Assembly: GCF_963676685.1 (NCBI RefSeq)
Contig: NC_092351.1
Span: 80,786,001-80,850,000, forward strand
DNA: 64,000 nt
Direction of reading: 5' to 3'
Origin: Mytilus edulis
Lineage: Eukaryota
Shown here: piece by piece, positions 1-61,800 of the stretch
Layout: every line of letters begins with the position of its first letter
Position numbering within the stretch: position 1 is the stretch's first letter
Translations under genes and position numbers: made by a program
The notes under the pieces: generated by a model
Databases searched by the model: none
The model's input: the letters and a program-made list of their open reading frames with translations, nothing else
Told to the model about the DNA's origin: nothing

Positions 1-495
1 GTCAAAAGATTTCAAGACGCCCTATGGGCTATTTAAAAAAAAATGATGCCTTTCCTTTAAACCTTTATCAGTCTCTTGTATGATACTATATCTGTAATGT
101 TTTTAGGTCAGATAATGTATTATGATTAGTTGGTCCTAACTACCAAAGATAATAGCAGTATGTGCTCTGTTTAAAAAATATTGTCCAAAATTGTACCTCA
201 AAATGTCAGGAGTGTAACGCTTTTAGTGTGACATTTAGAAGAAAGCATGTGCATTCATTGATGATATAGAATAAATAAGGGCAGATACAATACCAAACAA
301 TATCTTTCATCCAACTATTATATCTTTGACTATGATTTCTTGTTCAATTCTTCCATATATTTACATTTTTATGAGCCTCATAAGGTAAGTCAAATAAGTT
401 TGTGTAAAAAAAAAAATGTTAGTAAAAGTCAATATGCTGCCAGAAAATGTCTTTGTAGGTGAAATAACATGTTTCTGTACATCTTGCACAGTTTA

Positions 496-642
496 TTTTT
501 TAGCTCACCTGGCCCGAAGGGCCAAGTGAGCTTTTCCCATCACTTTGCGTCCGTCGTCCGTCGTCGTTAACTTTTACAAAAATCTTTTCCTCTGCAACTA
601 CTGGGCCAAATTAAACCAAACCTGGCCACAATCATTATTAGT
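496..642 (+). mobile_element. 5' fragment of a non-autonomous Helentron/DINE-like element, truncated at the KolobokP array
   Basis: T-run followed by the inverted repeat AGCTCACCTGGCCC-GAA-GGGCCAAGTGAGCT and a (CGTC/GTC)n microsatellite, the usual 5' module of these bivalve elements. Confidence 0.55.
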
Positions 643-1061
643 AAAGTAAAGATAAGGTGTATGTTTTTGTTATAGGGATAGTTTTTTGAAGCTTGTATGA
701 CAACTTTTTATGCATTTTATGGTATAGTACATAAAGAAGACAAAAATTCTACAAAATAAACAGATTGTAGTAAAACTAACCATGATTCAAATAGCTATTA
801 CACAAAGGCACAAGAAAAACACAAATATATAATGAGTTTATTAAGTAGACAAAAAAAATAATAATTTGAATAAAAAAAAAAAAATAGTGAACAGGAAAAA
901 AACACATCTTGCCGCAAACAGGGTATAGTTACTAGAAGTACTATAAAAATACAATAATGAAAAATCTACCATTGTAACTTATTATTTTCTATTACTTACA
1001 TAAATAACAACAAGAATATAAGAATATTTTGATACTAAAAGGGGTTTGAAAGTACAGTATA

Positions 1062-1520
1062 GGTTGCACTTTGTAAATCACGTGTGATTTGCAAGTCACG
1101 CCTCTTTTGGGGAGATATTGAATGTGCATTAAATACTGCTACTGTTTACATAGTTGTTGCCATGGATGCAAAGTAATTCTTTTTTAAATAAGACTTGATT
1201 GGAGAATTAAATGGATATAAATAAAAATGTCTATTTATTTAACTTATTTTTCAGGAGGACTGGAAGACATTTGGGTGTTGAGTCAAATTTAATGGAAAAA
1301 TTCAGTGCGAACCTGCAATGTTTATAAATGGAGGGCAGTAAAACTTAAAAATATGCCGCACAGCTATATGTTTTTATTAGTGCAAAAAAAAGTAGTGCAT
1401 GTCTCCTTTCCAGGGAAATATAACATTCTCCTCAAAACTTCCTGAATGAAGAGTGACTGCATATGCTATTTAGGCAGTTCCTATGGAAAACTGCATTGCT
1501 GGTTTTACACAAGTGCAACC
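1062..1520. repeat. LTDR copy 1 (459 bp)
   Basis: Starts GGTTGCACTTTGTAAA and ends TTTACACAAGTGCAACC (TIR). Flanked by TATA on both sides. About 99% identical to 12565-13022. Confidence 0.9.
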
Positions 1521-1612
1521 TATATATAAGGTAAATAATGGGAATTCACCCCTCAGCCTCCATGGGATCCCAATTTCGGACCCCTTATGGGTTTTCATTT
1601 TACAGAAACAAC

Positions 1613-1962
1613 ATGGAATCATTTTGGAATGCATTGGCTTTAGCTTTGTCTAAGAAAAGTGAAAAAAATTATGGAAATTATGACTGTACAGTGTGGGTTG
1701 GAGCTTTGGAGCATGGGGTCTATGGGGGAAAAGTTATGAATTGGCCTGATGGCACTAGAACTCTTGAAAGAGCTCACAGATTATCTTATATGCTAGATAA
1801 AAGAATATTAAAAGAAAATCTTCCCCGTTTCTCTGCCATAACCCCAAATGTATTAAACCGGAGCACCTGATTTTAGAGTCGCACAGTATAAACATAGAGA
1901 GAATTTTCTGTAGACGGACAAAACAGTGTACAAATAATCATTTACCGTGTTGTCTTATCTGA
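1613..1962 (+). pseudogene. His-Me finger (His-Cys box-like) endonuclease, copy 1, 34-bp deletion
   Basis: ATG follows the acceptor ttttacag. RAHRLSY is present. The deletion removes most of the DISHLC segment relative to copies 2 and 3. Confidence 0.8.
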
Positions 1963-1996
1963 TGCAGGTAATTTATTTATTTTTAACATGTCTTGA

Positions 1997-4393
1997 TCAG
2001 AGTTTTTTGGCAAACGAATACTCTTGAGGCTGTTTTGCGGCCAGCCGTTTTGTCGGTAAAAGTTTGTTTTTCTCATAGTCTTTTTCCTCTTGATACTCAT
2101 CATAAATTTTATATAGTTCATGCTTTTTTGAGCATCTCTGATCTGTGTACTGCTTTGACTGCTTATATAATTTATGTTTTTCATTGTGTTGTTGAATATT
2201 TTTCAGACCTCGGGCAGCACGACTTCTTGGTTCGATGGGAACCCCAGCCGCTTTACAGAGTTTAACGATGGATTCTCCAGGGCCATTATTTACATTGTGT
2301 ATAGCTGTATGTACCCTTCCTTTATAGTTTCTGGTAAATGTTACATTGCTAGGTACAGTTGCACGTATTGCACGGTTAGTTGCTTCAGCTTTTTGTGTGT
2401 TAGTGTTTTGGCATGTACGGTTTAGCATGGTAGGTCCAAGGCGATATTTTACACATTCACGTAACAATGCTGCTGTGTTCTCTGATTTATTTAATTTAAA
2501 GTTATTTTTCAGATAAGCTGATTTTTCAGTCCATGTCTTCAAACTGTTCCTATTTGAACAAACAAGGGAATATTTTGTACACCCGTTATGATCACCCTGA
2601 TAGCAAGAAACTATAGCATGACATACATATGATAGGTGAACTTTTACCCGTACAGAGTCCATATTGAATTTATCAAAGGCAGCATTGTACTCTGCCTGAC
2701 AACGTGCTGCCATATCTAATGCAAACCTTTTTAGCATTTTATCTTTCTCTGAAACTAATCGTGCCGGCATTATTTCCTTCAGACCTGACATTTTTTTAAT
2801 AAAATTTCTATGATTTGCGGACACATGTCTTGTATCTAGAAAATGAATTGGCTGAGTATTGGTTGTACCAGCTTTAAAAAGAGACTCTGCAGCTCTAAAT
2901 GCACTGCTGTCAGGGTCAGTGGTAATTTCTTGAACTTCCAGACCATCATTTTTCAGGTCTAACAAGCAGTCTTTAGCCCATCGCTCCTCACTGCCTATGC
3001 TGTCATGCATTTCAATGTTTGCGGAACAGTGACCTTTGTGAGATTTAACTTTTGTTTTTGTTTTATGTTCACTCTTATTTGAGCAAAGCTTAGACACTTG
3101 TCTTGTGCTTACAATACTGTGCTTATAAGTATTATTTTCTAACATGTTATATGTACATTGGGTAGCTGGTTGAAATGGTGTTTTACCCATTCCGGAATAA
3201 ATAGGGTTATTATACATTCCGTCGGCCTGAATGTTAATAATATTAGGATTATCACCTCTTAATATGTTTATTTCCTTAATTAATTTTCTTTTCTGAACCA
3301 AATCCTTTTGATTGTACTCTTCTATAATTTCAGAAACAACATTAGCACTGTGTTGCATACTTGAAGTGGAAGGAGCTGGTATATTAGAACCAAGAAATAA
3401 TTTCTGTAGACCAGTTGTGCTGATAGCTATGTGATTAAGTGCGACTTGTATGGATAGATTAATAGCTGCTGTTCGACGACCACGTTTCTTAGCGATCACC
3501 TCATTGTAAAGGTTGAACATTTTTGAATGGTAAGAATACTCATTGCAGCTTGCCTTTTCCCTCCAGGCAGCCCCTCTTTGCTGCTCTGCACTTAAATCCC
3601 ATGATATGAACCCTGTACACATAGGGGATATTTGTCTGTGTTCTATGAAAAACTCATTCCACATCTGTTCAAGTTCATTGATCCGAAGGAGTCGAAAACT
3701 ATTTTTCTCTGACCTGAAGTTGAAAAATGTTGCCAAAATTGAAGTGAATTAGTTTTTTATTTGTTAAACTAAGTTTGGAAAATGTGAAAATAATTCTATT
3801 TTGAATTACCTCCCTTACAATAGTGTTTTCTTTAAATAAGCTTTTTGATCAAATGTACTCTCAAAAGTGCATATTTTTTTCTTTGCCTGTGTTTTTATAT
3901 ATATATATAAAAACCATGCACTATTTAGCTCTTGAAAATATATATAGGACTAGAAATTTTAAAATAAGTATAATCCTAGCTTGCATTTTCTTCAGATGTC
4001 ACATTTAAAGAATTGGCATATAAGACACATGCCTTTTTCTTCATAGTTGTTTATAAATGGCTTTTTTAAGCAAGTTTAATTATTTTTGAAAGCTTAATAA
4101 CAAAAAAAGTATTCTCACCCTGTTTTTGTTTCATTTTTGGCACATTTTTCAACTTCTGTTTTTGTCGTAGGCTTTGGCCTTAGAAAGCGAGCTGACTTTG
4201 TAGAGGCAGGAATTAGTTGAACATTCTTTTTATGAACAGATTTAGTCACTAAGTCATACAAGTCTTTTGGTAGTCTCACAAATTTGCCTTTTTCAACAGG
4301 TAAAGTCTTATTTCTGTATTTTTTCCCCTTATTATATGGCATGTTTCCTTTCTGAAATGTGTATTTCCTTAGACGCCATGGGATTAGACCCAT
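1997..4393 (-). CDS. Kolobok/Mutator-like DDE transposase, copy 1; exons 4393-4119 and 3713-1997, ~663 aa
   Basis: Donor GG|GTGAG and acceptor ttcaacttcAG|G join in phase (KTG-SEKNSF). Motifs QADG, TTDPD, DTRH and QKAEATN. A CGA>TGA change removes only the last 8 aa. Confidence 0.8.
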
Positions 4394-5181
4394 TGTTATT
4401 GTAAGAATTGTTTGAAATGCACTTTATTCCAGTATTTTAATATTTAAACATCAAATATAGGACCTTACAACTAAACAATCATGAATGACTAAGTTTTTTG
4501 TTTATATCTGATGGAACTGAAGGTGACCCCAGATGTAAGATTTTTTATATAAATCATATAAAAATCATCATGATGGCTAATCTCATTATTTTGTAATTTG
4601 ACAAGTTCATATAATTTGACCTCTCTTCATTTTTTTTTTATCAGTGCTGACAGGCTTGTGTGCTATAACATAAACAGAAAGTAAAGATAAGGTGTATGTT
4701 TTTGTTATAGGGATAGTTTTTTGAAGCTTGTATGACAACTTTTTATGCATTTTATGGTATAGTACATAAAGAAGACAACAATTCTACAAAATAAACAGAT
4801 TGTAGTAAAACTAACCATGATTCAAATAGCTATTACACAAAGGTACAAGAAAAACACAAATATATAATGAGTTTATTAAGAAGACAAAAAAAATAATAAT
4901 TTCAATTAAAAAAAAAAAAATAGTGAACAGGAAAAAAACACATCTTGCCGCAAACAGAGTATAGTTACTAGAAGTACTATAAAAATACAATAATGAAAAA
5001 ACTACCATTGTAACTTATTATTTTCTATTACTTACATAAATATCAACAAGAATATAAGAATATTTTGATACTAAAAGGGGTTTGAAAGTACAGTATAAGG
5101 TAAATAATGGGAATTCACCCCTCAGCCTCCATGGGATCCCAATTTCGGACCCCTTTTGGGTTTTCATTTTACAGAAACAAC

Positions 5182-5564
5182 ATGGAATCATTTTGGAATG
5201 CATTGGCTTTAGCTTTGTCTAAGAAAAGTGAAAAAAATTATGGAAATTATGACTGTACAGTGTGGGTTGGAGCTTTGGAGCATGGGGTCTATGGGAAAAA
5301 GTTATAAATTGGCCTGATGGCACTAGAACTCTTGAAAGAGCTCACAGATTATCTTATATGCTAGATAAAAGAATATTAAAAGAAAATCTTCCCCGTTTCT
5401 CTCCAAACGGTGATCTTTTAGATATTTCACACCTTTGCCATAACCCCAAATGTATTAAACCGGAGCACCTGATTTTAGAGTCGCACAGTATAAACATAGA
5501 GAGAATTTTCTGTAGACGGACAAAACAGTGTACAAATAATCATTTACCGTGTTGTCTTATCTGA
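5182..5564 (+). pseudogene. His-Me finger endonuclease, copy 2 (1-bp frameshift in an A-run)
   Basis: RAHRLSY..DISHLCHNPKCIKPEHL..ESHSINIERIFC..C..H.PCC. The consensus is 127 aa. Confidence 0.85.
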
Positions 5565-5574
5565 TGCAGGTAAT

Positions 5575-7996
5575 TTATTTATTTTTAACATGTCTTGATC
5601 GGAGTTTTTTGGCAAACGAATACTCTTGAGGCTGTTTTGAGGCCAGCCGTTTTGTCGGTAAAAGTTTGTTTTTCTCATAGTCTTTTTCCTCTTGATACTC
5701 ATCATAAATTTTATATAGTTCATGCTTTTTTGAGCATCTCTGATCTGTGTACTGCTTTGACTGCTTATATAATTTATGTTTTTCATTGTGTTGTTGAATA
5801 TTTTCAGACCTCGGCAGCACGACTTCCTGGTTCGAAGGGAACCCCAGCCGCTTTACAGAGTTTAACGATGGATTCTCCAGGGCCATTATTTACATTGTGT
5901 ATAGCTGTATGTACCCTTCCTTTATAGTTTCTGGTAAATGTTACATTGCTAGGTACAGTTGCACGTATTGCACGGTTAGTTGCTTCAGCTTTTTGTGTGT
6001 TAGTGTTTTTGCATGTACGGTTTAGCATTGTAGGTCCAAGGCGATATTTTACGCATTCACGTAACAATGCTGCTGTGTTCTCTGATTTATTTAATTTAAA
6101 GTTATTTTTCAGATAAGCTGATTTTTCAGTCCATGTCTTCAAACTGTTCCTATTTGAACAAACAAGGGAATATTTTGTACACCCGTTATGATCACCCTGA
6201 TAGCAAGAAACTATAGCATGACATACATATGATAGGTGAACTTTTACCCGTACAGAGTCCATATTGAATTTATCAAAGGCAGCATTGTACTCTGCCTGAC
6301 AACGTGCTGCCATATCTAATGCAAACCTTTTTAGCATTTTATCTTTCTCTGAAACTAATCGTGCCGGCATTATTTCCTTCAGACCTGACATTTTTTTAAT
6401 AAAATTTCTATGATTTGCGGACACATGTCTTGTATCTAGAAAATGAATTGGCTGAGTATTGGTTGTACCAGCTTTAAAAAGAGACTCTGCAGCTCTAAAT
6501 GCACTGCTGTCAGGGTCAGTGGTAATTTCTTGAACTTCCAGACCATCATTTTTCAGGTCTAACAAGCAGTCTTTAGCCCATCGCTCCTCACTGCCTATGC
6601 TGTCATGCATTTCAATGTTTGCGGAACAGTGACCTTTGTGAGATTTAACTTTTGTTTTTGTTTTATGTTCACTCTTATTTGAGCAAAGCTTAGACACTTG
6701 TCTTGTGCTTACAATACTGTGCTTATAAGTATTATTTTCTAACATGTTATATGTACATTGGGTAGCTGGTTGAAATGGTGTTTTACCCATTCCGGAATAA
6801 ATAGGGTTATTATACATTCCGTCGGCCTGAATGTTAATAATATTAGGATTATCACCTCTTAATATGTTTATTTCCTTAATTAATTTTCTTTTCTGAACCA
6901 AATCCTTTTGATTGTACTCTTCTATAATTTCAGAAACAACATTAGCACTGTGTTGCATACTTGAAGTGGAAGGAGCTTGTATATTAGAACCAAGAAATAA
7001 TTTCTGTAGACCAGTTGTGCTGATAGCTATGTGATTAAGTGCGACTTGTATGGATAGATTAATAGCTGCTGTTCGACGACCACGTTTCTTAGCGATCACC
7101 TCATTGTAAAGGTTGAACATTTTTGAATGGTAAGAACACTCATTGCAGCTTGCCTTTTCCCTCCAGGCAGCTCCTCTTTGCTGCTCTGCACTTAAATCCC
7201 ATGATATGAACCCTGTATACATAGGGGATATTTGTCTGTGTTCTATGAAAACCTCATTCCTCATCTGTTCAAGTTCATTGATCCGAAGGAGTCGAAAACT
7301 ATTTTTCTCTGACCTGAAGTTGAAAAATGTTGCCAAAATTGAAGTGAATTAGTTTTTTATTTGTTAAACTAAGTTTGGAAAATGTGAAAATAATTCTATT
7401 TTGAATTACCTCCCTTACAATAGTGTTTTCTTTAAATAAGCTTTTTGATCAAATGTACTCTCAAAAGTGCATATTTTTTTCTTTGCCTGTGTTTTTATAT
7501 ATATTATATATAAAAACCATGCACTATTTAGCTCTTGAAAATATATATAGGACTAGAAATTTTAAAATAAGTATAATCCTAGCTTGCATTTTCTTCAGAT
7601 GTCACATTTAAAGAATTGGCATATAAGACACATGCCTTTTTCTTCATAGTTGTTTATAAATGGCTTTTTTAAGCAAGTTTAATTATTTTTGAAAGCTTAA
7701 TAACAAAAAAAGTATTCTTACCCTGTTTTTGTTTCATTTTCGGCACATTTTTCAACTTCTGTTTTTGTCGTAGGCTTCGGCCTTAGAAAGCGAGCTGACT
7801 TTGTAGAGGCAGGAATAAGTTGAGCATTCTTTTTATGAACAGATTTAGTCACTAAGTCATACAAGTCTTTTGGTAGTCTCACAAATTTGCCTTTTTCAGC
7901 AGGTAAAGTCTTATTTCTGTATTTTTTCCCCTTATTATATGGCTTGTTTCCTTTCTGAAATGTGTATTTCCTTAGACGCCATGGGATTAGACCCAT
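5575..7996 (-). pseudogene. DDE transposase, copy 2 (exons 7996-7722 and 7313-5575; frameshift near 5810)
   Basis: The 510-aa ORF and an overlapping C-terminal ORF reproduce copy 1. Donor GG|GTAAG. Confidence 0.8.
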
Positions 7997-8789
7997 TGTT
8001 ATTGTAAGAATTGTTTGAAATGCACTTTGTTCCAGTACTTTAATATTTAAACATCAAATATAGGACCTTACAACTAAACAATCATGAATGACTAAGTTTT
8101 TTGTTTATATCTGATGGAACTGAAGGTGACCCCAGATGTTAGATTTTTTATATAAATCATATAAAAATCATCATGATGGCTAATCTCATTATTTTGTAAT
8201 TTGACAAGTTCATATAATTTGACCTCTCTTCATTTAATTTTTTTATCAGTGCTGACAGGCTTGTGTGCTATAACATAAACAGAAAGTAAAGATAAGGTGT
8301 ATGTTTTTGTTATAGGGATAGTTTTTTGAAGCTTGTATGACAACTTTTATGCATTTTATGGTATAGTACATAAAGAAGACAAAAATTCTACAAAATAAAC
8401 AGATTGTAGTAAAACTAACCATGATTCAAATAGCTATTACACAAAGGCACAAGAAAAACACAAATATATAATGAGTTTATTAAGAAGACAAAAAAAATAA
8501 TAATTTGAATAAAAAAAAAAATAATAATGAACAGGAAAAAAACACATGTTGCCGCAAACAGGGTATTATGAGTTACTAGAAGTACTATAAAAATACAATA
8601 ATGAAAAAACTACCATTGTAACTTATTATTTTCTATTACTTACATAAATAACAACAAGAATATAAGAATATTTTGATACTAAAAGGGGTTTGAAAGTACA
8701 GTATAAGGTAAATAATGGGAATTCACCCCTCAGCCTCCATGGGATCCCAATTTCGGACCCCTTTTGGGTTTTCATTTTACAGAAACAAC

Positions 8790-9171
8790 ATGGAATCATT
8801 TTGGAATGCATTGGCTTTAGCTTTGTCTAAGAAAAGTGAAAAAAATTATGGAAATTATGACTACAGTGTGGGTTGGAGCTTTGGAGCATGGGGTCTATGG
8901 GAAAAAAGTTATGAATTGGCCTGATGGCACTAGAACTCTTGAAAGAGCTCACAGATTATCTTATATGCTAGATAAAAGAATATTAAAAGAAAATCAATCC
9001 CGTTTCTCTCCAAACGGTGACCTTTTAGATATTTCACACCTTTGCCATAACCCCAAATTTATTAAACCGGAGCACCTGATTTTAGAGTCGCACAGTATAA
9101 ACATAGAGAGAATTTTCTGTAGACGCACAAAACAGTGTACAAATAATCATTTACCGTGTTGTCTTATCTGA
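8790..9171 (+). pseudogene. His-Me finger endonuclease, copy 3 (2-bp deletion and Cys>Phe)
   Basis: GACTACAG versus GACTGTACAG in other copies; HNPKF versus HNPKC. Confidence 0.8.
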
Positions 9172-9181
9172 TGCAGGTAAT

Positions 9182-11608
9182 TTATTTATTTTTAACATGT
9201 CTTGATCGGAGTTTTTTGGCAAACGAATACTCTTGAGGCTGTTTTGCGGCCAGCCGTTTTGTCGGTAAAAGTTTGTTTTTCTCATAGTCTTTTTCCTCTT
9301 GATACTCATCATAAATTTTATATAGTTCATGCTTTTTTGAGCATCTCTGATCTGTGTACTGCTTTGACTGCTTATATAATTTATGTTTTTCATTGTGTTG
9401 TTGAATATTTTTCAGACCTCGGGCAGCACGACTTCCTGGTTCGATGAGAACCCCAGCCGCTTTACAGAGTTTAACGATGGATTCTCCAGGGCCATTATTT
9501 ACATTGTGTATAGCTGTATGTACCCTTCCTTTATAGTTTCTGGTAAATGTTACATTGCTAGGTACAGTTGCACGTATTGCACGGTTAGTTGCTTCAGCTT
9601 TTTGTGTGTTAGTGTTTTTGCATGTACGGTTTAGCATGGTAGGTCCAAGGCGATATTTTACGCATTCACGTAACAATGCTGCTGTGTTCTCTGATTTATT
9701 TAATTTAAAGGTATTTTTCAGATAAGCTGATTTTTCAGTCCATGTCTTCAAACTGTTCCTATTTGAACAAACAAGGGAATATTTTGTACACCCGTTATGA
9801 TCACCCTGATAGCAAGAAACTATAGCATGACATACATATGATAGGTGAACTTTTACCCGTACAGAGTCCATATTGAATTTATCAAAGGCAGCATTGTACT
9901 CTGCCTGACAACGTGCCGCCATATCTAATGCAAACCTTTTTAGCATTTTATCTTTCTCTGAAACTAATCGTGCCGGCATTATTTCCTTCAGACCTGACAT
10001 TTTTTTAATAAAATTTCTATGATTTGCGGACACATGTCTTGTATCTAGAAAATGAATTGGCTGAGTATTGGTTGTAACAGCTTTAAAAAGAGACTCTGCA
10101 GCTCTAAATGCACTGCTGTCAGGGTCAGTGGTAATTTCTTGAACTTCAAGACCATCATTTTTCAGGTCTAACAAGCAGTCTTTAGCCCATCGCTCCTCAC
10201 TGCCTATGCTGTCATGCATTTCAATGTTTGCGGAACAGTGACCTTTGTGAGATTTAACTTTTGTTTTTGTTTTATGTTCACTCTTATTTGAGCAAAGCTT
10301 AGACACTTGTCTTGTGCTTACAATACTGTGCTTATAAGTATTATTTTCTAACATGTTATATGTACATTGGGTAGCTGGTTGAAATGGTGTTTTACCCATT
10401 CCGGATTAAATAGGGTTATTATACATTCCGTCGGCCTGAATGTTAATAATATTAGGATTATCACCTCTTAATATGTTTATTTCCTTAATTAATTTTCTTT
10501 TCTGAACCAAATCCTTTTGATTGTACTCTTCCATAATTTCAGAAACAACATTAGCACTGTGTTGCATACTTGAAGTGGAAGGAGCTGGTATATTAGAACC
10601 AAGAAATAATTTCTGTAGACCAGTTGTGCTGATAGCTATGTGATTAAGTGCGACTTGTATGGATAGATTAATAGCTGCTGTTCGACAACCACGTTTCTTA
10701 GCGATCACCTCATTGTAAAGGTTGAACATTTTTGAATGGTAAGAACACTCATTGCAGCTTGCCTTTTCCCTCCAGGCAGCCCCTCTTTGCTGCTCTGCAC
10801 TTAAATCCCATGATATGAACCCTGTACACATAGGGGATATTTGTCTGTGTTCTATGAAAACCTCATTCCACATCTGTTCAAGTTCATTGATCCGAAGGAG
10901 TCGAAAACTATTTTTCTCTGATCTGAAGTTGAAAAATGTTGCCAAAATTGAAGTGAATTAGTTTTTTATTTGTTAAACTAAGTTTGGAAAATGTGAAAAT
11001 AATTCTATTTTGAATTACCTCCCTTACAATAGTGTTTTCTTTAAATAAGCTTTTTGATCCAATGTACTCTCAAAAGTGCATATTTTTTGCTTTGCCTGTG
11101 TTTTTATATATATATTATATATAAAAACCACGCACTATTTAGCTCTTGAAAATATATATAGGACTAGAAATTTTAAAATAAGTATAACCCTAGCTTGCAT
11201 TTTCTTCAGATGTCACATTTAAAGAATTGGCATATAAGACACATGCCTTTTTCTTCATAGTTGTTTATAAATGGCTTTTTTTAAGCAAGTTTAATTATTT
11301 TTGAAAGCTTAATAACAAAAAAAGTATTCTTACCCTGTTTTTGTTTCATTTTCGGCACATTTTTCAACTTCTGTTTTTGTCGTAGGCTTCTGCCTTAGAA
11401 AGCGAGCTGACTTTGTAGAGGCAGGAATTAGTTGAACATTCTTTTTATGAACAGATTTAGTCACTAAGTCATACAAGTCTTTTGGTAGTCTCACAAATTT
11501 GCCTTTTTCAGCAGGTAAAGTCTTATTTCTGTATTTTTTCCCCTTATTATATGGCATGTTTCCTTTCTGAAATGTGTATTTCCTTAGACGCCATGGGATT
11601 AGACCCAT
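9182..11608 (-). pseudogene. DDE transposase, copy 3 (exons 11608-11334 and 10922-9182; nonsense codon at 10406-10408)
   Basis: TAT>TAA splits the ORF into 179-aa and 405-aa parts. The C-terminus is full length (RSRHVKNK). Confidence 0.8.
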
Positions 11609-12313
11609 TGTTATTGTAAGAATTGTTTGAAATGCACTTTATTCCAGTATTTTAATATTTAAACATCAAATATAGGACCTTACAACTAAACAATCATGAA
11701 TGACTAAGTTTTTTGTTTATATCTGATTGAACTGAAGGTGACCCCAGATGTAAGATTTTTTATGTAAATCATATAAAAATCATCATGATGGCTAATCTCC
11801 TTATTTTGTAATTTGACAAGTTCATATAATTTGACCTCTCTTCATTTAATTTTTTTATCAGTGTTGACAGGCTTGTGTGCTATAACATAAACAGAAAGTA
11901 AAGATAAGGTGTATGTTTTTGTTATAGGGATAGTTTTTTGAAGCTTGTATGACAACTTTTTATGCATTTTATGGTATAGTACATAAAGAAGACAAAAATT
12001 CTACAAAATAAACAGATTGTAGTAAAACTAACCATGATTCAAATAGCTATTACACAAAGGCACAAGAAAAACACAAATATATAATGAGTTTATTAAGTAG
12101 ACAAAAAAAATAATAATTTGAATAAAAAAAAAAAAATAGTGAACAGGAAAAAAACACATCTTGCCGCAAACAGGGTATAGTTACTAGAAGTACTATAAAA
12201 ATACAATAATGAAAAAACTACCATTGTAACTTATTATTTTCTATTACTTACAAAAATAACAACAAGAATATAAGAATATTTTGATACTAAAAGGGGTTTG
12301 AAAGTACAGTATA

Positions 12314-12564
12314 AGGTAAATAATGGGAATTCACCCCTCAGCCTCCATGGGATCCCAATTTCGGACCCCTTTTGGGTTTTCATTTTACAGAAACAACATG
12401 GAATCATTTTGGAATGCATTGGCTTTAGCTTTGTCTAAGAAAAGTGAAAAAAATTATGGAAATTATGACTGTGCAGTGTGGGTTGGAGTTTTGGAGCATG
12501 GGGTCTATGGGAAAAAAGTTATGAATTGGCCTGATGGCACTAGAACTCTTGAAAGTACAGTATA
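12314..12564 (+). pseudogene. Internally deleted fourth unit (5' part of the His-Me gene only)
   Basis: Sequence jumps at the microhomology TTGAAAG from the nuclease ORF to the last bases of the internal region. Confidence 0.85.
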
Positions 12565-13022
12565 GGTTGCACTTTGTAAATCACGTGTGATTTGCAAGTT
12601 ACGCCTCTTTTGGGGAGAAATTGAATGTGCATTAAATACTGCTACTGTTTACATAGTTGTTGCCATGGATGCAAAGTAATTCTTTTTTAAATAAGACTTG
12701 ATTGGAGAATTAAATGGATATAAATAAAAATGTCTATTTATTTAACTTATTTTTCAGGAGGACTGGAAGACATTTGGGTGTTGAGTCAAATTTAATGGAA
12801 AAATTCAGTGCGAACCTGCAATGTTTATAAATGGAGGGCAGTAAAACTTGAAAATATGCCGCACAGCTATATGTTTTTATTAGTGCAAAAAAAAGTAGTG
12901 CATGTCTCCTTTCCAGGGAAATATAACATTCTCCTCAAAACTTCCTGAATGAAGAGTGACTGCATATGCAATTTAGGCAGTTCCTATGGAAAACTGCATT
13001 GCTGGTTTTACACAAGTGCAAC
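12565..13022. repeat. LTDR copy 2, right terminus followed by TTAA
   Basis: Direct repeat of 1062-1520 with about 5 differences. Ends GTGCAAC|TTAA. Confidence 0.9.
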
Positions 13023-14250
13023 TTAAAGAAATGTATCCGGTTGAAATTACTTTAAATAAAGATAATACTAACAACGACCACTGCCTTTTCCTTTATTTTG
13101 AAATCATTAACGGAAAGCTAAATACAAAAAAAATATGATAAAAGAGATGATTTTTTATTTCCAATCGCTAATTATCCATTTTTAGATGGTGATGTCCCTT
13201 GTCACCATCTTATGGTGTTTATATATCTCAACTTTTACGATTCGCTAGTGTATGTAACAACGTTTCAGTTTTTGGCGAGAGAAATTTATTTATTACTGAA
13301 ATATTATTAAACCAGGGTTTTAGATATCACAAACCAGTCAAAACATTTACTAAATTTTATCAACGGTACAAGGACATCATTATTAAATATAGCTCAACAT
13401 GCAGACATCTTATACGTTCAGGTATTTCACATCCAATCTTTTATGGTAATATGCTTTACAAAGCACAAAAATGTCAGTATTCCCCTCAAAAGCTAACAAA
13501 ACCTTTAAACAAACTTATCAAGAAGGGATATAGTTACGATACTGTTGTCAGGTTATTGAAGATTGCATATTTTGGCTTTAATATTGATTCACTTATTGGG
13601 TCTTTGCATCGGAATTACAAATATTTATTCTAAAACCAGTTGTTTGCATGACATGTGTTATGTTCTTCTCATATATTTCATGATGCTGTAATACTAAATT
13701 CCCTAACAGGAGGGATTTTTTTTACTGATATTCATATGATGAAGACATAATCTCTAAATCAGTTTAATTGAGGTCGGGAGCTGGCATGTCAATAACTGCT
13801 AGTAGTCTATTGTTATGTATCATGTTTATGTATTAACGTTTTATTGTCATTTTGTTTATTGTCTTTTGTTACGTCTTCTGACATCGGACTCAAACTTCTT
13901 TTGAACTAAATTTTACTGTACGTATTGTTATGCGTTTACTTTTCTACATGCATTAGAGGAATAGGGGGAGGGTTGAGATCTCAAAAAATATGTTTACCCC
14001 CTCCACATTTTTGCGCCTGTCCTAAGCCAGGAGCATCTGGCCTTTGTTAGTTTGTAGGATTTTAAATTTAAGCTTCTTGTGTAAAATTCAGAGTTTAGAA
14101 TGACGTCAATTATCACTGAACTAGTATAAACATTTGTTTAGGGCCAGCTGGAGGACGCCTCCGGTTGCGAGAGTTTCTCGCTGCATTGAAGACCTATTGG
14201 TGATCTTCAGCTTTTGTCTGTTCTATGGTCGAGTTGTTGTCTTTTTGACA
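13023..14250 (+). mobile_element. Penelope-like retroelement remnant (RT C-terminus and 3' region), cut by the KolobokP insertion
   Basis: KEMYP..YDKRDDF.FPI.NYPFLDGDVP.SPSYGVYISQLLRFA, with frameshifts. The right boundary is approximate. Confidence 0.7.
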
Positions 14251-15615
14251 AATTCCCCTATTCAAATATACATCATTCATAGTCATGCATTTAACATTGC
14301 AGTGTCATCTGTAACAGTGAAGTGGCCGTTAAAACTCTTCAGCTAGAATTCGTTTGTTTTTGCATCCCTTGCAATAGCAAGCAGACAATGAGGCGGGTTA
14401 TAATGATAAATCTCTCCAGCAATTGCTTGAGGCTAAACAAATATAGAACATGTGGACAGGTACAGATCTTGGATAGTTTTGGATATTGTTCGATTTGCTT
14501 CCAGTTTTCGAGGAGCAGGTGTGATAACTTATCAAGTCAGCGCCATCATCGGGACCTTTTTGTCTTTGTATTGTACACGTTCATCTCGGCTGAAGTTGTC
14601 CGCACGAGAGAAACCGTTATCAATAACATTGAGAACGGAAATGGGGAATGTTCAAAGAGACAACAACCCGACCAATGAAAAAAAAACAAGCTGATGGCCA
14701 TCATAGTGTCTTCAAATTAAGCAGCGAGAAAATCCAACATCCGGACTCGAGCTTCATCTGGCCTCTAAACATAAATGAACGTAATACTAAACTCCGTAAT
14801 ATATAGAAGAACTTGAATTAGAAATCATTGCTTGAAGGCTAACAAAGAATAGAGGCTCCTGAATTGGGAAAGGCGCAACAAGGTTATGTCTTTTTTTTTC
14901 TAATTTCTTGTAGACGCCTTTTTGTAGCATCATTGGTGGTGCAAATCCGTTTTATTTTAAAAATAAATTGAAAGCCTAGTCCGATAGATACATGTAAGAT
15001 TCCGCTTATGATATAATTATAAATATATTGATACGAAGTAATAAAGATGTCACACGTACAATATCAAGAAATACATAACTTGCATAGTCAATTATATTAA
15101 CAAAATATGTTGCATAATTAGCTTTCATATTTGAATCTATAAAAGTAATATATTAATATCATACTGAAATAATATACTAATAAAGAAATGAAATTCCATA
15201 GTTTCTGTTAACCATACTCTACATATATCTCAAACGAAACATATTTATATTTATGATAAGAAATCATAGTGAAATTATGTGAAAGAAATGTCCTATCAAT
15301 GCCAGAAAATTTTATTGTATTAAATGGAAGGAACACAGCTTGAGAGGTACATGTATGTGGTCTGTACCATCTATAAACTTAGCCAATACCTTCATCATGA
15401 ATTCGTTCGCTTAAACACACTTACCTACTTTGAAGATTGAATATTTATCGTATGTTAAAGCTATACCAAACCAATTACAAACACGTTTTTCAAGATCTCA
15501 ATATTAACAAATTTGAGTGTAAAACACCAGATTCATTATTCACAAATAATTCAACTGGCCTCGTTCCTAATATTGACCTAAATATTTATCAAAGGTACCA
15601 GGATTATAATTTAGT

Positions 15616-15659
15616 ACGCCAGACGCGCGTTTCGTCTACATAAGACTCATCAGTGACGC
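15616..15659 (-). ncRNA. Type I hammerhead ribozyme
   Basis: GCGUCA CUGAUGA GUCU-uaugu-AGAC GAAA CGCGCG UC^UGGCGU: intact core, stems I and II, palindromic minimal stem III. Confidence 0.9.
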
Positions 15660-15970
15660 TCATATCAAAATATTTATAAAGCCAAACAAGTACAAAGTTG
15701 AAGAGCATTGAAAATCCAAAATTCCCCAAAGTTGTGCCAAATACAGCTGAGGTAATCTATGACTGGGATCAGAAAATCCTTAGTATTTCGAAAAATTCAA
15801 AGTTTTGTAAACGAGAAATTTATAAAAATGACCACAATATTGATATTCATGTCAACACCGAAGTGTTGACTACTCGGCTGGTGATACACTCGGGAACGAA
15901 ACGTCCACCAGCAGTGGTATCGAACCAGTGGTGTAAATAGTTATCAAAGGTACCAGGATTATAATTTAGT

Positions 15971-16014
15971 ACGCCAGACGCGCGTTTCGTCTACATAAGA
16001 CTCATCAGTGACGC
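15971..16014 (-). ncRNA. Type I hammerhead ribozyme
   Basis: Identical to 15616-15659. Confidence 0.9.
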
Positions 16015-18609
16015 TCATATCAAAATATTTTTAAAGCCAAACAAGTACAAAGTTGAAGAGCATTGAAAATCCAAAATTCCCAAAAGTTGTGCCAAATACA
16101 GCTAAGGTAATCTATTCCTGGGATCAGAAAATCCTTATTATTTCGAAAAATTCAAAGTTTTGTAAACAAGAAATTTATAAAAATGACCACAATATTGATA
16201 TTCATGTCAACACCGAAGTGTTGACTACTGGGCTGGTGATACCCTCGGGGATGAAACGTCCACCAGCAGTGGCATCGGCCAAGTGGTGTAAGTAGTTATC
16301 AAAGGTACCAGGATTATAATTTAGTACGCTAAACATTGTCAATAAAACTTCTCGGCGAAATGTGTTATATGAAGGCCGAAATTCATCAATTTGAAACACC
16401 AAAAATAGTATTATAATAAGGATAATGTCATGCTATTAGCTAAAAGAAAAATAAAGGTGACACATGCTCAGAATAATTTAAATCTGTGAGGTCGTTGGTG
16501 TAAATCAGAATTTAATCTATCTATAAATACACATCCTAGCCGATCTTTAATTATACCGCATAGTCAGTAATCAAAAGCTCCGGAATGACAATGTGAAAAC
16601 AATTCAAACGAGAAAACTAACGGCCTAATTTATGTACAAAAAATGAACGAAATACAAATATGTCACACATAACCAAACGACAACCACTTACAGGCTCCTG
16701 ACTAGGGACATGCACGTACATATGTAATGTGGTGGGGTTGAATATGTATGCGGGATTCGTTTGTTCTTTATTGATATATAGTTCAGCTGGCCATGTCATT
16801 AATTGTGACCTAAATTTTGTCAATAAAACTTCTCGTTGAAATATGTTATATGAGGGCCGAATTCCATCAATTTGAAACACAACAAATACGAATAGAATAA
16901 GTTCACGATAATGCCTTGCAATCAGTTAAAGGAAAAGTAAACGTTGACATTCTGTCAGAATATTCTAAATCTTTGAGGTCATTTGTGTAAATCAGAACGT
17001 TATCAATCTATAACAAATACACATCCTCGCCGATTTTGAAATACATCAAATGTGGCTACGGTGATGACTGCTAAATCAAAAATACTATTCCTTATTCTGG
17101 AACGTTACTTTAAGCTTTGTAAATAAGTGACATATAAAAAGCAGATAATGTAATATGCCATATACATGTATATATACGTCTATAAACCAGAAAATTGAAG
17201 ATGTACTGGAACGTATTGAAAATAAGGAACAAAATATTATAATAATATATATGTGCATATTATTTATATTTTGCAGTGTTTTTTGAAAAATACATGTGAA
17301 ATTTTGCTGATGAAATCATAATTTATATATTGATGACGAAATAAGAAAGATGTTACACAAACAACATCAAGAAATTCATAATTTGCATAATCAATTATAT
17401 TAACAAAGAAAAACAGTGCTGTATAATTAGCTAATATCACCAAAGTACCTTATGTTTGCCCTTATAAGTTGCATTTATAGGGCTGTGCGGCATATTTTCA
17501 ACGTTTATATGCCCTGAACTTTTCAGAGTTTAAACTTACACTATTTTTTTTAACTACCCCTACCTCGAATGAAGGGTTACCTCAGATTTCAATGTAAAAA
17601 ATATGCACATGTATATTTACTGGTAACATTCCCAAATTATGTCTCTATGAGATTGAACACAGAGAGCATAACTTGGAACCAGTATGTAAACAAAATTAAT
17701 TTTCTATGAATATTCTAAATCTCCCCAAAAGAAGCGTGGTTTGAGAAAAAACAGCTGTTTTTACAAAGTGAAACCTGTATTTGAATCTATCAAAGTATTA
17801 TATCAATATCCTGCTAATACAAAAATGAAATTCCACAGTTTCTGTAACCCATTCTATACATACTCTATATATACAGCAAACGAAACATATTTATATTAAT
17901 GATAAGATATATTGAAATTATGTTATTGAAATGTCCCATCAATGCCAGAACAAGTTATTGCATTAAACATGAATGGAAAACAGCCTGGGAAGTCTATGTC
18001 TTCCAATTTGATTTTTTTATTTTCTGATTCTGAAAAAGACGAATGTCAGGCAAACTTGATGATTGCTTTGTCAAGTATAGTATTCCTTTTCCTGATGTAG
18101 GTAATCAAAACTTTGCAAATAAATGGCATAGTATATGCAGATTATTTAATATGCCTTATACATGACAAATGTTGTGTATGCTGCAATTAGATCCCTCTAC
18201 AACGATTTTTTTAGATGCACACGTATACGTTTTGCGGTTTTTATCCAACGCAATCATAGGTTTGAACGTTGTTTTCAATTTAAAGTTGTATTATATATAT
18301 GAATAATTCGTAAACGTGCGCAAAGTTAAACACAAATACAATTAAGATTTGTAAAATATGGATACCTTATATTCTGAATTACTAAATTCTATTTCACAAA
18401 ATTTACCATAGCGTGAAATATTTTCTCTGTTTCACCTTTGAAAGGTATAAAAATGTTGATGTCGTTAACGTCTATTGTTGTGGACTTTGAAGGCCCATTT
18501 AAATTGTGATATACATGTAGTTTAATAACATTTTACTTTTTTAATGGAGAAAATATAATATTGTAATTTTTACATTTTTTTTTTTAATCCTTATAATATA
18601 TTTTATTCG

Positions 18610-58849: not shown

Positions 58850-61800
58850 TTATATGGTCATTCTCCTTGAACAGCATCTAGCGTATTTGTTTGCAAGTTG
58901 ATTTTTTTCAGTGTAACTCGTATTTTGGACGATCATACTCCTATTTGTTTTTTTCCGTACATCAATCGAAAACTTAAGTCTGTCATATGTTTCCGATCTT
59001 ACAATTCCATCATAAGCAGGTTCATCATAAACATGTCCGTCATTTTCTTTTTCAGCAACTGTATCCGTTATTGTAAACACTTCATGTTCCAACATTATGT
59101 TTATTGGATAATGCTGCGCAATATTCTCTGGCCAAAGATAACCATCCGAATAATAATGCTCTGCTGCAGGTTTCAAGCTATTTAATGTGTTTTCACTAAG
59201 ACTGTATCGATGACGTCGTTTACTTGATTGTCGAGACGGTTGGAAATGAGAACAAAGCCGTGTCGTGGAGCGGCTATTTTGATTAACATTGATGTTTATT
59301 GTGTTACAAGAACTATTTGTTACTTCTAAGTAAGAGTTGTGTAATTGTGTCTCGATGGTCAATGGTGTCAACGTTTCTCCTGATTCGTGTATTTCGTCAT
59401 ATATACTTTCACTTATCTCTTCAGTTCGTTGTTGTCTGACAATGTCTGCTTTTACTTCAATTTCTTTGAGTGGAGTTACAAATATCATCCTTTGTCTTTT
59501 TAGACACATAAACCTGTACATCAATCCAAGACATACAAGACATACCAGAAGACCAAAGCATACAAGGATGATTTCTCGTAACGTTATTGCTGAAAATGAA
59601 TATAAATATCGAAATAAAATTTCTTGTTAATAAACAGTCACTTTTTAAAGTTCACCCAGATTTTCATAAATGAGGTCACACAAATTAGAAAGAAACCCTT
59701 AATGGTATTGTGTTAAATTTTTTTAGCATTGTGGTCATCGTTTTGTAGTATCAGGGTTTCAATATATTTCAATAAATGCTTGTTTCCAATCAACTATTTT
59801 AGAACTCATAGTAATTTAGATTATAATTATAAAATAATTGTTGATGAATTCCTTGGAGTTTAAGGGAAACATCATTGTCTAGATAGGGTGTCTTTTATTT
59901 CTGTTTTCCTAATATGCTTAGATTTTTTTCTCTATTTTTTTTAAAACAAGTGTCCATTAATTTTGTTTAATTGTAGCTTCCCATTATTGTATGTTATTTA
60001 TTTCTTTGGACTTTTTTTCATTATTTTTGTCCATTGTCCCGTTACTGTATACCCCGTCTTAGGGAAACAATACAAATCACGGGGCAAACAGACTTTTTTT
60101 AATAACCAGCAGTAAGCATATCGTGTTAGCAAGAAAAGGTATCTTTTGTCCCTCTTTTATTGCTGTAGCAATCATTACCATTGCAAAACATTAACAAAAT
60201 ATAATAAACTTTTATTGGAATTTTACATAAACCAAATTGTTTCATACCAATGCCATGTTATATTCAAATATTGTGAACTGATACAAGCGTTTCTTTTTAC
60301 CTGATATTTCCCTCTTATTTCTGTTCAGTGGAAGTTGTAGGAATCATTGTAGTTTTGTTTTGTTTGATGAAAATTCTACTTTATATCTATATACAATACA
60401 GATTAATTATGCATGTATTGCTATAACATTCAAAACAATAACTACTTGAAAAACTGACATGCCAGCAAAGGTCCCGGTTGGACAATTTTATGTGAGGAAA
60501 AGTAACAAATACATATAAAGCAAATGTTCGTCAGTTTTCAATTTTCAATAAATTGGACACGACACATTAATTCACGATATTTTGCTGATAAATATATGTT
60601 TTGTTAAATTTCAATCACGCATTTCGTCTATACTATACATTACATTTGATTTAAATGAAATGATTCCGGTATTCGTTCTGTTTTATCACTACCAAAAAGA
60701 GCATTGTACGAACATTACACGCTAACTTTTATTTTTATAGCATTTTGGGCCAGTCATGCTTTATTTATAAATATATAGTACAAAAGGACAAACTCACAAA
60801 TAAAAATGGCATCTGCTTCTTGTATTTTATCATATGCGGTGCTTCTCTCATTATCTATAAAAAAAAACCTGGTAAATACCTTATCATACATAGATTTCAG
60901 GAGACTCGTTCCTGTAATCATCTCGCTCCCTCAAAGGGGTGCATGCGAGAACAAAAAATAAAAGTGAAAATTGAAGTAACATAAGATATTGCAGAACTAC
61001 CATAAAGACAAGAGTCTTAAAGGAAAACAACATAGATGTGTGTATGGATTGTTAGATTTTTACTGTTTGTTTCAATAGAACAGCTAGTATGGTAGGCAAT
61101 TACCTTAACTTCGGATCCTACATCACAAAACGCATTTTGTTTGTTTTTGCATTTCAATTGTTTCATATTTTTTATGTCTTATAACCGACTATACAGAATG
61201 TTTTTTTTCTCCTTGTTGAACATGTTGAAGGCTGTATGGTTGCTTATAATTAGTAACATTTCCTTTAGTTTTAAACTTTGGTGAATGTTTGATTCATTGG
61301 CAATTATACCTCATATTTTCATGTTATATTTTCAGCATCACTTAACCAATTATCAAATTAATAGATAAAACCATTTAGATAAATTAATGTAAATACGTCT
61401 TTAAAACAAGCCAAGAGCCCGCATGGGACCTGAACATTAGATGTATACTTATTTAACATACACCCGTACATGTCGTGTCTAAAAATTATGAAAAAAATGC
61501 ATGAAATCATTCAGGATCTTTTCTGCTGTTCATCCAAAAATGTTGTGATTTAGATTTGTAAAAAATCGCTATTTATGTCCTAAGAAGTCAAATAACCGTG
61601 CCAGATCTTGTCTATTTTATTTTCTTTGTTGATATTTTTTTTCCGTTTACAGTTTCTCAGAAGTTAATATACAAATACAGATCACTTTAACTATGTAAAA
61701 AACCGATACTGTATAGTAAGCGTTGAAAGGCATCGAAATGACTGATATAAAACAGATGAAAAGAAACAAATGATTTACGTATTAATCAAAAGAATAGGAA

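What the first reader, a model, noticed from the sequence alone, without database searches (positions are those of the whole stretch)
1062..13026. KolobokP internal region amplified as LTDR-less head-to-tail multimers between two LTDRs
Seen: LTDR-I-I-I-(deleted I)-LTDR. The three I-I junctions (TATA at 5094, 8702 and 12310) all read GTACAG-TATA-AGGTAAAT. The LTDR-containing junction reads GTACAG-TATA-[LTDR]-TATATATA-AGG. Established: KolobokP elements are LTDR-internal-LTDR units encoding a DDE transposase and a His-Me nuclease. Inference: one joining of the two inner LTDR-flanking TATA sites made an LTDR-free junction, either by LTDR excision from a tandem dimer or by circularisation of the internal region. 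That junction was then amplified by rolling-circle copying or unequal exchange. The whole 12-kb block retains outer TIRs and could move as one unit. I do not know of this configuration having been described.
Basis: partly seen in the sequence, partly recalled or inferred. Interest (0 to 1): 0.85.

Follow-up and report, generated by a model that had tools for sequence, protein, structure and literature searches.

The report
Decayed KolobokP transposon tandem array
This is a real but ordinary, decayed head-to-tail array of a known mussel DNA transposon (KolobokP) in which three unit junctions lack the usual terminal repeat. That layout, down to the single shared TATA, was published in 2022, and this copy spread by duplication of the surrounding DNA, not by jumping.

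Summary
The structure is in the assembly as described. It has a 3,608-bp internal unit (INT), three identical LTDR-free junctions (TATA at 5094, 8702, 12310), a fourth INT cut to 245 bp, and two 459-bp LTDRs.

That LTDR is therefore internal to a once larger array, and its left edge (about 640-642) is a deletion junction.

The element is KolobokP: the LTDRs run GG..CC with 10-bp TIRs, and Pfam finds a Mutator-like transposase and a His-Me nuclease. It fits KolobokP-5_MyEd / KolobokP-3_MyCo.

The claim that this layout is undescribed is wrong. Kojima and Bao 2022 (PMC9587614) report LTDR-(INT)n-LTDR, up to (INT)4, with one TATA at each INT-INT junction, and explain it by LTDR excision.

- **Junction distribution:** the junction 27-mer occurs 12 times genome-wide, only in one cluster on the same chromosome plus one unplaced contig.
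- **Shared origin:** the cluster's arrays form one clade and share the same right flank and TAAA target site. They spread by duplication and unequal exchange.
- **Age:** units differ by 1.0-1.2%, every nuclease copy is broken, and no left TSD exists.

Movement as one unit, and circles or rolling-circle copying, have no support. Copy number could not be checked with reads.

The parts
1..642 (.). Left flank, not KolobokP. Positions 494-639 are a truncated copy of a dispersed repeat. The break to INT sequence lies at about 640-642.
   Evidence: Window 1-639 is 99.1% identical to C8:80918252-80918893. There the repeat continues, followed by 14.5 kb of non-KolobokP DNA before an INT that starts at unit position 722. 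The window edge is therefore a deletion junction.
643..1061 (.). Partial INT (unit 3190-3608) ending in GTACAG plus TATA (1058-1061).
   Evidence: BLAST gives 97.6% identity to unit 3190-3608. Its nearest copy is the INT at C8:80933427, with 1 difference in 414.
1062..1520 (.). Left LTDR, 459 bp, GG..CC, with a 10-bp TIR (GGTTGCACTT). It is internal to the original array.
   Evidence: A 19-mer of its end matches only the KolobokP-3_MyCo LTDR in the paper's supplement.
1521..5093 (.). INT1. It starts with an expanded TATATATA. The nuclease gene carries a 34-bp deletion. Transposase frames on the minus strand are 1997-3736 (579 aa ORF, 583 codons open) and 4115-4393 (92 aa).
5094..8701 (.). INT2 (reference unit, 3,608 bp). 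TATA 5094-5097 is the first LTDR-free junction. The nuclease gene (5107-5564, + strand) has a 1-bp frameshift. The transposase gene (5804-7336 and 7718-7996, minus strand) is frameshifted near codon 512.
   Evidence: Its closest copy is C8:80944573 (0.39% different, SH-aLRT 99).
8702..12309 (.). INT3. TATA 8702-8705 is the second LTDR-free junction. The nuclease gene has a 2-bp deletion. The transposase frame is split by one stop into 9182-10399 and 10406-10945 (minus strand). The exon-1 frame is 11330-11608.
   Evidence: Its closest copy is C8:80948186 (0.61% different, SH-aLRT 98).
12310..12564 (.). INT4 remnant. TATA 12310-12313 is the third LTDR-free junction. Unit positions 1-245 are joined through the microhomology TTGAAAG (12549-12555) to the last 9 bases of INT (TACAGTATA). 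About 3.35 kb are deleted.
   Evidence: The same deletion is present at C8:80951794-80952046.
12565..13023 (.). Right LTDR, 459 bp. It differs from the left LTDR at 5 of 459 positions. The terminal base is T instead of C.
   Evidence: The paralogue at C8:81439058-81439516 keeps CC.
13024..13027 (.). TAAA target site, the right half of the TSD of the original insertion. It is followed by the flank that all three arrays share.
   Evidence: An empty-site paralogue at C8:81200414 reads ...GTATGTATAC|TAAAGAAATG. The flank is about 100% identical at C8:80952505 and 98% at C8:81439517 over 6 kb.

Best explanation
This is a truncated, decaying fragment of a KolobokP multimer. The family matches KolobokP-5_MyEd and is close to KolobokP-3_MyCo.

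**Proposed history**
1. One element inserted at a TAAA site inside another repeat on this chromosome (shown).
2. It multimerised (shown).
3. At one INT-LTDR-INT junction the LTDR and one of its two flanking TATAs were lost, giving CAG-TATA-AGG. This most likely happened once and early, either by transposase-mediated excision of the LTDR as a solo element or by TATA microhomology deletion (inferred).
4. That junction was then carried along as INT units were multiplied and reshuffled. The processes were unequal crossing-over within arrays and duplication of the whole locus with its flank. The result is at least three arrays on this chromosome and one on an unplaced contig (shown for the duplication; inferred for the exchange mechanism).
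5. Later, a microhomology deletion removed most of the last INT. A further deletion removed the left part of the window's array and joined INT position 3190 to flank DNA.
6. Each unit then accumulated its own inactivating mutations.

The block is therefore a relic and not a mobile super-element.
For: **Identity**
- The LTDRs are 459 bp, GG..CC, with 10-bp TIRs.
- Dispersed monomers show LTDR-INT-LTDR with 4-bp TSDs: TATA, TGGA, TAAA, TACA.
- Pfam gives PF20700 at 2.5e-41 and PF05551 at 2.3e-15, on opposite strands.
- The LTDR matches the published KolobokP-3_MyCo LTDR.
- The sizes fit KolobokP-5_MyEd: 4,532 bp, 459-bp LTDR, 10-bp TIR.

**Junction**
- In monomers, INT begins and ends with TATA. 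The I-I junction keeps one TATA, exactly as published.
- The junction 27-mer occurs 12 times: 3 in the window, 4 at 80.936-80.952 Mb, 1 at 81.4358 Mb and 4 on contig C500. None occurs at dispersed copies.
- All LTDR-INT junctions now in the cluster carry expanded TATATATA or TCTATATA. Present-day loss of an LTDR plus 4 bp would not give CAG-TATA-AGG. This favours one early event.

**Common descent**
- All cluster INTs form one clade (SH-aLRT 94).
- INT2 and INT3 pair with positional counterparts in the array at 80.94 Mb.
- The three arrays share the right flank and the TAAA site. An empty paralogue exists.

**Ongoing unit amplification**
- A unit carrying a private 745-bp insertion is repeated three times with a 4,835-bp period at 81.401-81.415 Mb.

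**Age and decay**
- Units differ by 0.98-1.21%.
- Each nuclease copy is broken in a different way.
- The transposase is broken in INT2 and INT3.

**Left edge**
- Searches show that it is a deletion junction.
Against: - If LTDR excision is always precise, a single origin of the junction cannot be told apart from repeated events.
- The tree has little resolution inside the cluster: 12 of 22 inner branches are below 80.
- INT1 has no clear positional counterpart in the second array, so the order of events is only partly reconstructed.
- Some of the 'paralogous' arrays, 99-99.5% identical in their flanks, could be the other haplotype placed side by side by the assembler.
- No reads spanning the array were available.
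Confidence: 0.72

Rival explanations
1. Each LTDR-free junction arose independently. A solo LTDR was excised precisely from a canonical (LTDR-INT)n array at each of the three positions, and again in the other arrays.
For: Kojima and Bao argue that LTDRs are excised as solo elements and that INT-INT junctions regularly keep one TATA. The window has an LTDR after its leftmost INT fragment, whereas the closest counterpart of that fragment in the second array is followed directly by an INT.
Against: The junction is absent from the dispersed copies examined. Every LTDR-INT junction now in the cluster has extra TA or TC bases, so excision today would leave a different footprint. Published footprints vary by 1-5 bp, yet all 12 junctions here are identical. 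INT1 and its supposed counterpart are not close, so the presence or absence of the LTDR is not at a proven homologous junction.
Confidence: 0.12
2. An INT-only circle closed at the TATA formed, either by circularisation or excision. It was copied by rolling-circle replication or re-integrated by homologous recombination, and this seeded the LTDR-free run.
For: The unit is exactly one INT with one TATA, which is what a circle junction would look like. The paper discusses circular intermediates for KolobokP, in the LTDR-INT form.
Against: There is no direct evidence. Rolling-circle products should be each other's closest relatives. Here INT1, INT2 and INT3 differ by 0.98-1.21%, and each is nearer to a unit of another array at 0.39-0.78%. 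The run ends in ordinary INT-LTDR junctions, and its last unit is explained by a simple microhomology deletion.
Confidence: 0.05
3. Assembly artefact. The number of INT units, or the existence of several arrays, is inflated by mis-assembly of a repeat or by keeping both haplotypes.
For: The flanks of the window array and of the array 132-153 kb away are 99.1-99.5% identical. Window 59000-63999 is about 100% identical to a place 399 kb away. An unplaced contig carries four more junctions. Mussel genomes are highly heterozygous (own knowledge). No spanning reads could be laid.
Against: The three units differ by about 1% and carry private lesions: a 34-bp, a 1-bp and a 2-bp deletion, a frameshift and a stop. 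They are therefore distinct molecules and not stutter. The two arrays differ by large insertions, an LTDR and a 17-kb deletion.
Confidence: 0.08
4. The INT-INT tandem is the older state. LTDRs, acting as solo non-autonomous elements, later inserted into the TATA at some junctions and duplicated it.
For: TATA-LTDR-TATA looks like a 4-bp TSD, and 4 bp is the TSD length of this family. TATA is also one of the observed targets.
Against: Dispersed monomers already have LTDR-TATA..INT..TATA-LTDR, so LTDR-flanked INT is the transposing form. Repeated hits on one 4-bp site are unlikely, because the paper finds no strong target preference.
Confidence: 0.03

Closest known systems
KolobokP multimers of the form LTDR-(INT)n-LTDR (Kojima and Bao, Mob DNA 2022, PMC9587614), for example KolobokP-1_MeMe LTDR-(INT)4-LTDR and KolobokP-4_MyCo
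   Same: INT units abut directly without an LTDR. INT starts and ends with TATA, and only one TATA remains at the junction. LTDRs lie at the sides. The published explanation is LTDR excision plus unequal crossover.
   Different: Here the array has no TSD pair. Its left side is an INT fragment ending in a deletion junction. It is one of several arrays that share one insertion site. The paper counted only insertions with recognisable TSDs.
KolobokP-5_MyEd (Mytilus edulis) and KolobokP-3_MyCo (M. coruscus) families
   Same: LTDR of 459/458 bp, TIR of 10 bp, full length 4,532/4,518 bp against about 4,534 bp here. The LTDR end matches the KolobokP-3_MyCo LTDR in the supplement.
   Different: The consensus of KolobokP-5_MyEd was not available for alignment. 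Table S1 lists its TSD as '?', whereas dispersed copies here show 4-bp TSDs. The table lists 6 INT copies in the old assembly. Here there are at least 47 INT matches, most of them in one cluster.
Bacterial composite transposons and IS26 translocatable units
   Same: A coding middle part lies between two short elements that have their own inverted ends. The flanking element can leave on its own. Circles are proposed as intermediates.
   Different: The LTDRs carry no transposase. This is a eukaryotic host. No circle has been shown.
Tandem arrays of LTR retrotransposons / TRIMs
   Same: Head-to-tail units share terminal repeats and change in number by unequal recombination.
   Different: This is a DNA transposon. 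The junctions here lack the terminal repeat altogether.

Membership tests
KolobokP | Long terminal direct repeats of about 450 or about 660 bp flanking an internal region | tested here: met
   459-bp LTDRs at 1062-1520 and 12565-13023. Dispersed copies are LTDR-INT-LTDR.
KolobokP | Each LTDR has its own short TIRs (up to 18 bp) with termini 5'-RR..YY-3' | tested here: met
   GGTTGCACTT .. AAGTGCAACC, a 10-bp TIR with GG..CC termini. The right LTDR of the window ends in CT.
KolobokP | TSD of 3-5 bp at both ends of the insertion | tested here: not met
   This is met for dispersed monomers, with 4-bp TSDs. At this locus only the right TAAA is present. The expected left junction is absent from the genome, and the left edge is a deletion junction. 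This concerns the integrity of this copy, not family membership.
KolobokP | DDD/E transposase of Kolobok type in INT | tested here: inconclusive
   PF20700 'Mutator-like transposase' at 2.5e-41 over 376 residues. Motifs visibly shared with KolobokP transposases appear in the paper's alignment passage (by eye). Catalytic residues and Kolobok-specific placement were not tested by a tree.
KolobokP | His-Me finger (His-Cys box) nuclease downstream of the transposase on the opposite strand | tested here: met
   PF05551 zf-His_Me_endon at 2.3e-15. It is convergent with the transposase. It is intact in only one of the 15 full-length copies aligned (C13), and all window copies are broken.
LTDR-(INT)n-LTDR multimer (Kojima and Bao 2022) | INT units directly abutted, with a 3-4 bp micro-deletion at the junction | tested here: met
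   INT is TATA..TATA in monomers. The junction has one TATA, a 4-bp loss, three times in the window.
LTDR-(INT)n-LTDR multimer (Kojima and Bao 2022) | The whole multimer is bounded by LTDRs and one TSD pair (a single insertion) | tested here: not met
   INT sequence lies outside the left LTDR (643-1057), and there is no left TSD.

The most novel reading that the evidence does not exclude
The LTDR-free junction marks a 3.6-kb INT-only circle closed at the TATA. Such a circle would act as a eukaryotic counterpart of the IS26 translocatable unit and re-enter arrays by homologous recombination. On this reading, the roughly 150 kb of KolobokP arrays on this chromosome are built and maintained by that route, or by nuclease-induced unequal exchange, and not by passive duplication.
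Probability: 0.06. Interest if true: 0.6.

Novelty: already known. Interest (0 to 1): 0.15.

Why it matters
It matters little as a discovery. The configuration and its explanation are in the 2022 paper that defined KolobokP.

The locus has modest value as material:
- A chromosome-level mussel assembly shows one KolobokP insertion that grew into several arrays. These are 12, 19 and about 116 kb long, and there is also an unplaced contig.
- The arrays share one target site, and an empty paralogue exists.
- Together these form a natural series for studying how such multimers expand, lose LTDRs and decay.
- The dispersed copies supply the 4-bp TSD that Table S1 leaves open for the best-fitting family, if the family assignment holds.

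Tried and rejected
1. **Reads.** Only short Logan unitigs of DNA runs and one RNA run were available.
   - The unitigs break at the TATA.
   - They show the canonical LTDR-C-TATAAGG joint in two runs, but none bridges an I-I junction.
   - There is therefore no verdict on copy number or on the junction in other individuals.
   - RNA depth over INT3 was 0-2 reads.
2. **Search for the ancestral left end.**
   - The pattern X-left + TAAA + LTDR start, with up to 3 mismatches, gave one hit on C1.
   - That hit proved to be an unrelated weak LTDR-like match.
   - The sequence left of the empty site has no close copy next to any array.
3. **Test for independent LTDR loss.** I tried to show that the LTDR left of INT1 is missing at the homologous junction of the second array. 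INT1 and its supposed counterpart differ by 1.37%, so they are not positional homologues, and the argument was dropped.
4. **Mapping the whole 650-kb cluster.** The map therefore rests on hit coordinates and 36 short loci.
5. **Peptide words in the paper's supplements.** There were no hits, because the alignments there are gapped.
Full report
**Observation**

The window holds a tandem repeat with a 3,608-bp period. Exact motif searches put GTACAGTATAAGGTAAAT at 5088, 8696 and 12304. A 459-bp element starting GGTTGCAC and ending GTGCAACC sits at 1062-1520. The left LTDR sits in the context GTACAG-TATA-[LTDR]-TATATATA-AGG. A second copy lies at 12565-13023, preceded by GTACAG-TATA and followed directly by the flank. 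The two copies differ at 5 of 459 positions.

BLAST of the middle unit against the window gives the following units:

| Unit | Window coordinates | Note |
|---|---|---|
| INT1 | 1525-5093 | 98.6% to INT2 |
| INT2 | 5094-8701 | reference unit |
| INT3 | 8702-12309 | 98.45% to INT2 |
| INT4 | 12310-12555 | only unit positions 1-245 |

Three details were not in the finding:
- Unit positions 3190-3608 also occur at 643-1057, immediately left of the left LTDR.
- The truncated INT4 is joined to the last bases of INT through a 7-bp microhomology, TTGAAAG.
- The final base of the right LTDR is T and not C.

**What it is**

The only papers in the library that mention KolobokP are Kojima and Bao 2022 (PMC9587614) and one 2026 paper that mentions it four times and was not read. 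The element meets the published definition in these respects:
- The LTDRs are about 450 bp with their own TIRs and GG..CC termini.
- There is a convergent gene pair. One ORF hits Pfam PF20700 (Mutator-like transposase, 2.5e-41), on the window's minus strand. The other hits PF05551 (zinc-binding loop of His-Me homing endonucleases, 2.3e-15), on the plus strand.
- Ten dispersed copies elsewhere in the same genome are plain LTDR-INT-LTDR monomers. Where both ends are readable they have 4-bp TSDs: TATA, TGGA, TAAA, TACA.

The end of the LTDR matches the KolobokP-3_MyCo LTDR printed in the paper's supplement. The dimensions fit KolobokP-5_MyEd in Table S1: 4,532 bp, 459-bp LTDR and 10-bp TIR.

**The junction**

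In the monomers INT reads TATA-AGG...CAG-TATA between the LTDRs. The LTDR-free junction CAG-TATA-AGG is therefore two INTs sharing one TATA, a 4-bp loss.

This is exactly what the paper reports:
- LTDR-(INT)n-LTDR insertions are tabulated for three families.
- KolobokP-1_MeMe has cases up to LTDR-(INT)4-LTDR. [quoted passage not shown]
- The authors explain this by excision of a solo LTDR, or of a monomer, from an (LTDR-INT)n-LTDR multimer.
- They propose that unit number then changes by unequal crossover.

**Genome-wide context**

The window is C8:80786001-80850000 of a 1.37-Gb assembly. The junction 27-mer occurs 12 times:

| Place | Junction copies |
|---|---|
| The window | 3 |
| C8:80.936-80.952 Mb | 4 |
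| C8:81435850 | 1 |
| Unplaced contig C500 | 4 |

None occurs in any dispersed copy.

A maximum-likelihood tree of 25 INT copies puts all 15 cluster copies in one clade (SH-aLRT 94). It pairs INT2 with C8:80944573 (99) and INT3 with C8:80948186 (98). That second array also ends in INT(1-245), LTDR and flank.

The 6 kb to the right of the window's array behaves as follows:
- It is about 100% identical at C8:80952505.
- It is 98% identical at C8:81439517. That position is the right end of a roughly 116-kb array made mostly of canonical LTDR-INT units.
- It is 94-96% identical at C8:81200414, where there is no KolobokP.

This last paralogue, together with a copy of the same repeat on C10, shows the empty site ...GTATGTATAC|TAAAGAAATG. 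One element therefore inserted at a TAAA site. Every array of the cluster whose right end was read descends from that insertion.

**The edges of the window's array**

- The expected left end (left flank, TAAA, LTDR start) is nowhere in the genome. The single near-match on C1 is unrelated.
- Window 1-639 is 99.1% identical to C8:80918252-80918893. There the flank repeat continues, followed by 14.5 kb of other DNA and then an INT that begins at unit position 722.
- The INT fragment at 643-1057 is closest to that INT, with 1 difference in 414.
- The window's left edge is therefore a deletion junction inside a formerly longer array. The left LTDR is an internal LTDR and not an outer terminus.

Together with the mutated last base of the right LTDR, this removes the basis for 'retains outer TIRs and could move as one unit'. 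What is documented is spread by duplication of the locus with its flank.

**One origin or several, and by what process**

All LTDR-to-INT junctions now present in the cluster read CC-TATATATA-AGG (the window) or CC-TCTATATA-AGG (the large array). Monomers read CC-TATA-AGG. Loss of an LTDR plus 4 bp from the present junctions would not give CAG-TATA-AGG. The 12 identical junctions are therefore best explained by one early loss in the canonical context, followed by copying.

Copying of units after they acquired private changes is directly visible elsewhere in the cluster. A unit with a 745-bp insertion is repeated three times with a 4,835-bp period, and a truncated-LTDR variant occurs twice.

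The window's three units differ by 0.98-1.21%. Each is nearer to a unit of another array, at 0.39-0.78%. This fits old units reshuffled by unequal exchange and duplication. It does not fit a recent burst of rolling-circle copies. Nothing tested here speaks for INT circles. That possibility remains open only because it was not testable.

**State of the genes**

| Unit | Nuclease gene | Main transposase frame |
|---|---|---|
| INT1 | 34-bp deletion that removes the His-containing core | open for 583 of 591 codons |
| INT2 | 1-bp frameshift | frameshifted near codon 512 |
| INT3 | 2-bp deletion | interrupted by one stop |
| INT4 | truncated | absent |

The lesions differ between units, so they arose after the units separated. 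RNA reads from one run gave depth 0-2 over INT3.

**What could not be done**

The only DNA runs offered were Logan unitigs, which break at the TATA branch point. They confirm canonical LTDR-INT joints in two runs. They say nothing about the I-I junction or copy number.

The arrays 132-153 kb apart have 99.1-99.5% identical flanks. Window 59000-63999 is about 100% identical to a place 399 kb away. Some 'paralogues' could therefore be the second haplotype kept by the assembler. The private lesions and the roughly 1% divergence show that the three units in the window are distinct sequences, not stutter.

**Verdict**

This is a real structure in the assembly. It is correctly recognised as KolobokP, and its junction logic was correctly read. 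However:
- The configuration and its explanation are already published.
- The block is a truncated relic inside a duplicated region.
- The mobility and circle ideas are unsupported.

Interest is low.

Noticed in passing
G000:C8:81323725-81439516 (loci L002-L008, L015, L020, L023-L027, L029, L030): An array of the same family spanning about 116 kb, mostly canonical LTDR-INT units. About 50 kb in the middle (81346133-81396243) returned no scored hits. Its LTDR variant carries a 16-bp insertion. It contains higher-order repeats: a unit with a 745-bp insertion repeated three times at a 4,835-bp period. INT breakpoints recur at unit position about 1302 on both sides of the 50-kb stretch without scored hits.
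   Followed up: partly
G000:C8:81200414 (L032) and C10:70171261 (L033): An empty-site paralogue of the array's insertion site. It is 94-96% identical to the right flank and reads ...GTATGTATAC|TAAAGAAATG. The host sequence is itself a dispersed repeat.
   Followed up: yes
window 59000-63999: About 100% identical over 5 kb to C8:81244187-81249189, 399 kb away. The region is a mosaic of very recent duplications or retained haplotypes.
   Followed up: partly
window 13128-14300 and 15579-16000: The right flank is made of very high-copy repeats, with summed unitig depth in the thousands to 170,000 in three runs. A 355-bp direct repeat pair lies at 15579-16000. A roughly 750-bp tandem family (window about 15579-16329) occurs on many chromosomes.
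   Followed up: no
LTDR ends, window 1062-1069 and 1513-1520: If the two LTDR ends are abutted over one TATA, they form a perfect 20-bp palindrome (GTGCAACC-TATA-GGTTGCAC). This is the kind of symmetric site the paper suggests for the His-Me nuclease.
   Followed up: partly
window 5107 (also 1538 and 8715): The nuclease start codon lies only 14 bp inside INT. Its promoter must therefore lie in the LTDR or, at LTDR-free junctions, in the tail of the preceding INT.
   Followed up: no
G000:C500:1-19100: An unplaced contig carries four more LTDR-free junctions with spacings of 3606, 3848 and 5425 bp. This is a further array variant or a haplotig.
   Followed up: no
dispersed copies L009, L011-L019: Monomers of this family show 4-bp TSDs, whereas Table S1 of the 2022 paper lists the TSD of the best-fitting family (KolobokP-5_MyEd) as unknown. 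Only the C13 copy keeps an open 152-codon nuclease frame.
   Followed up: partly
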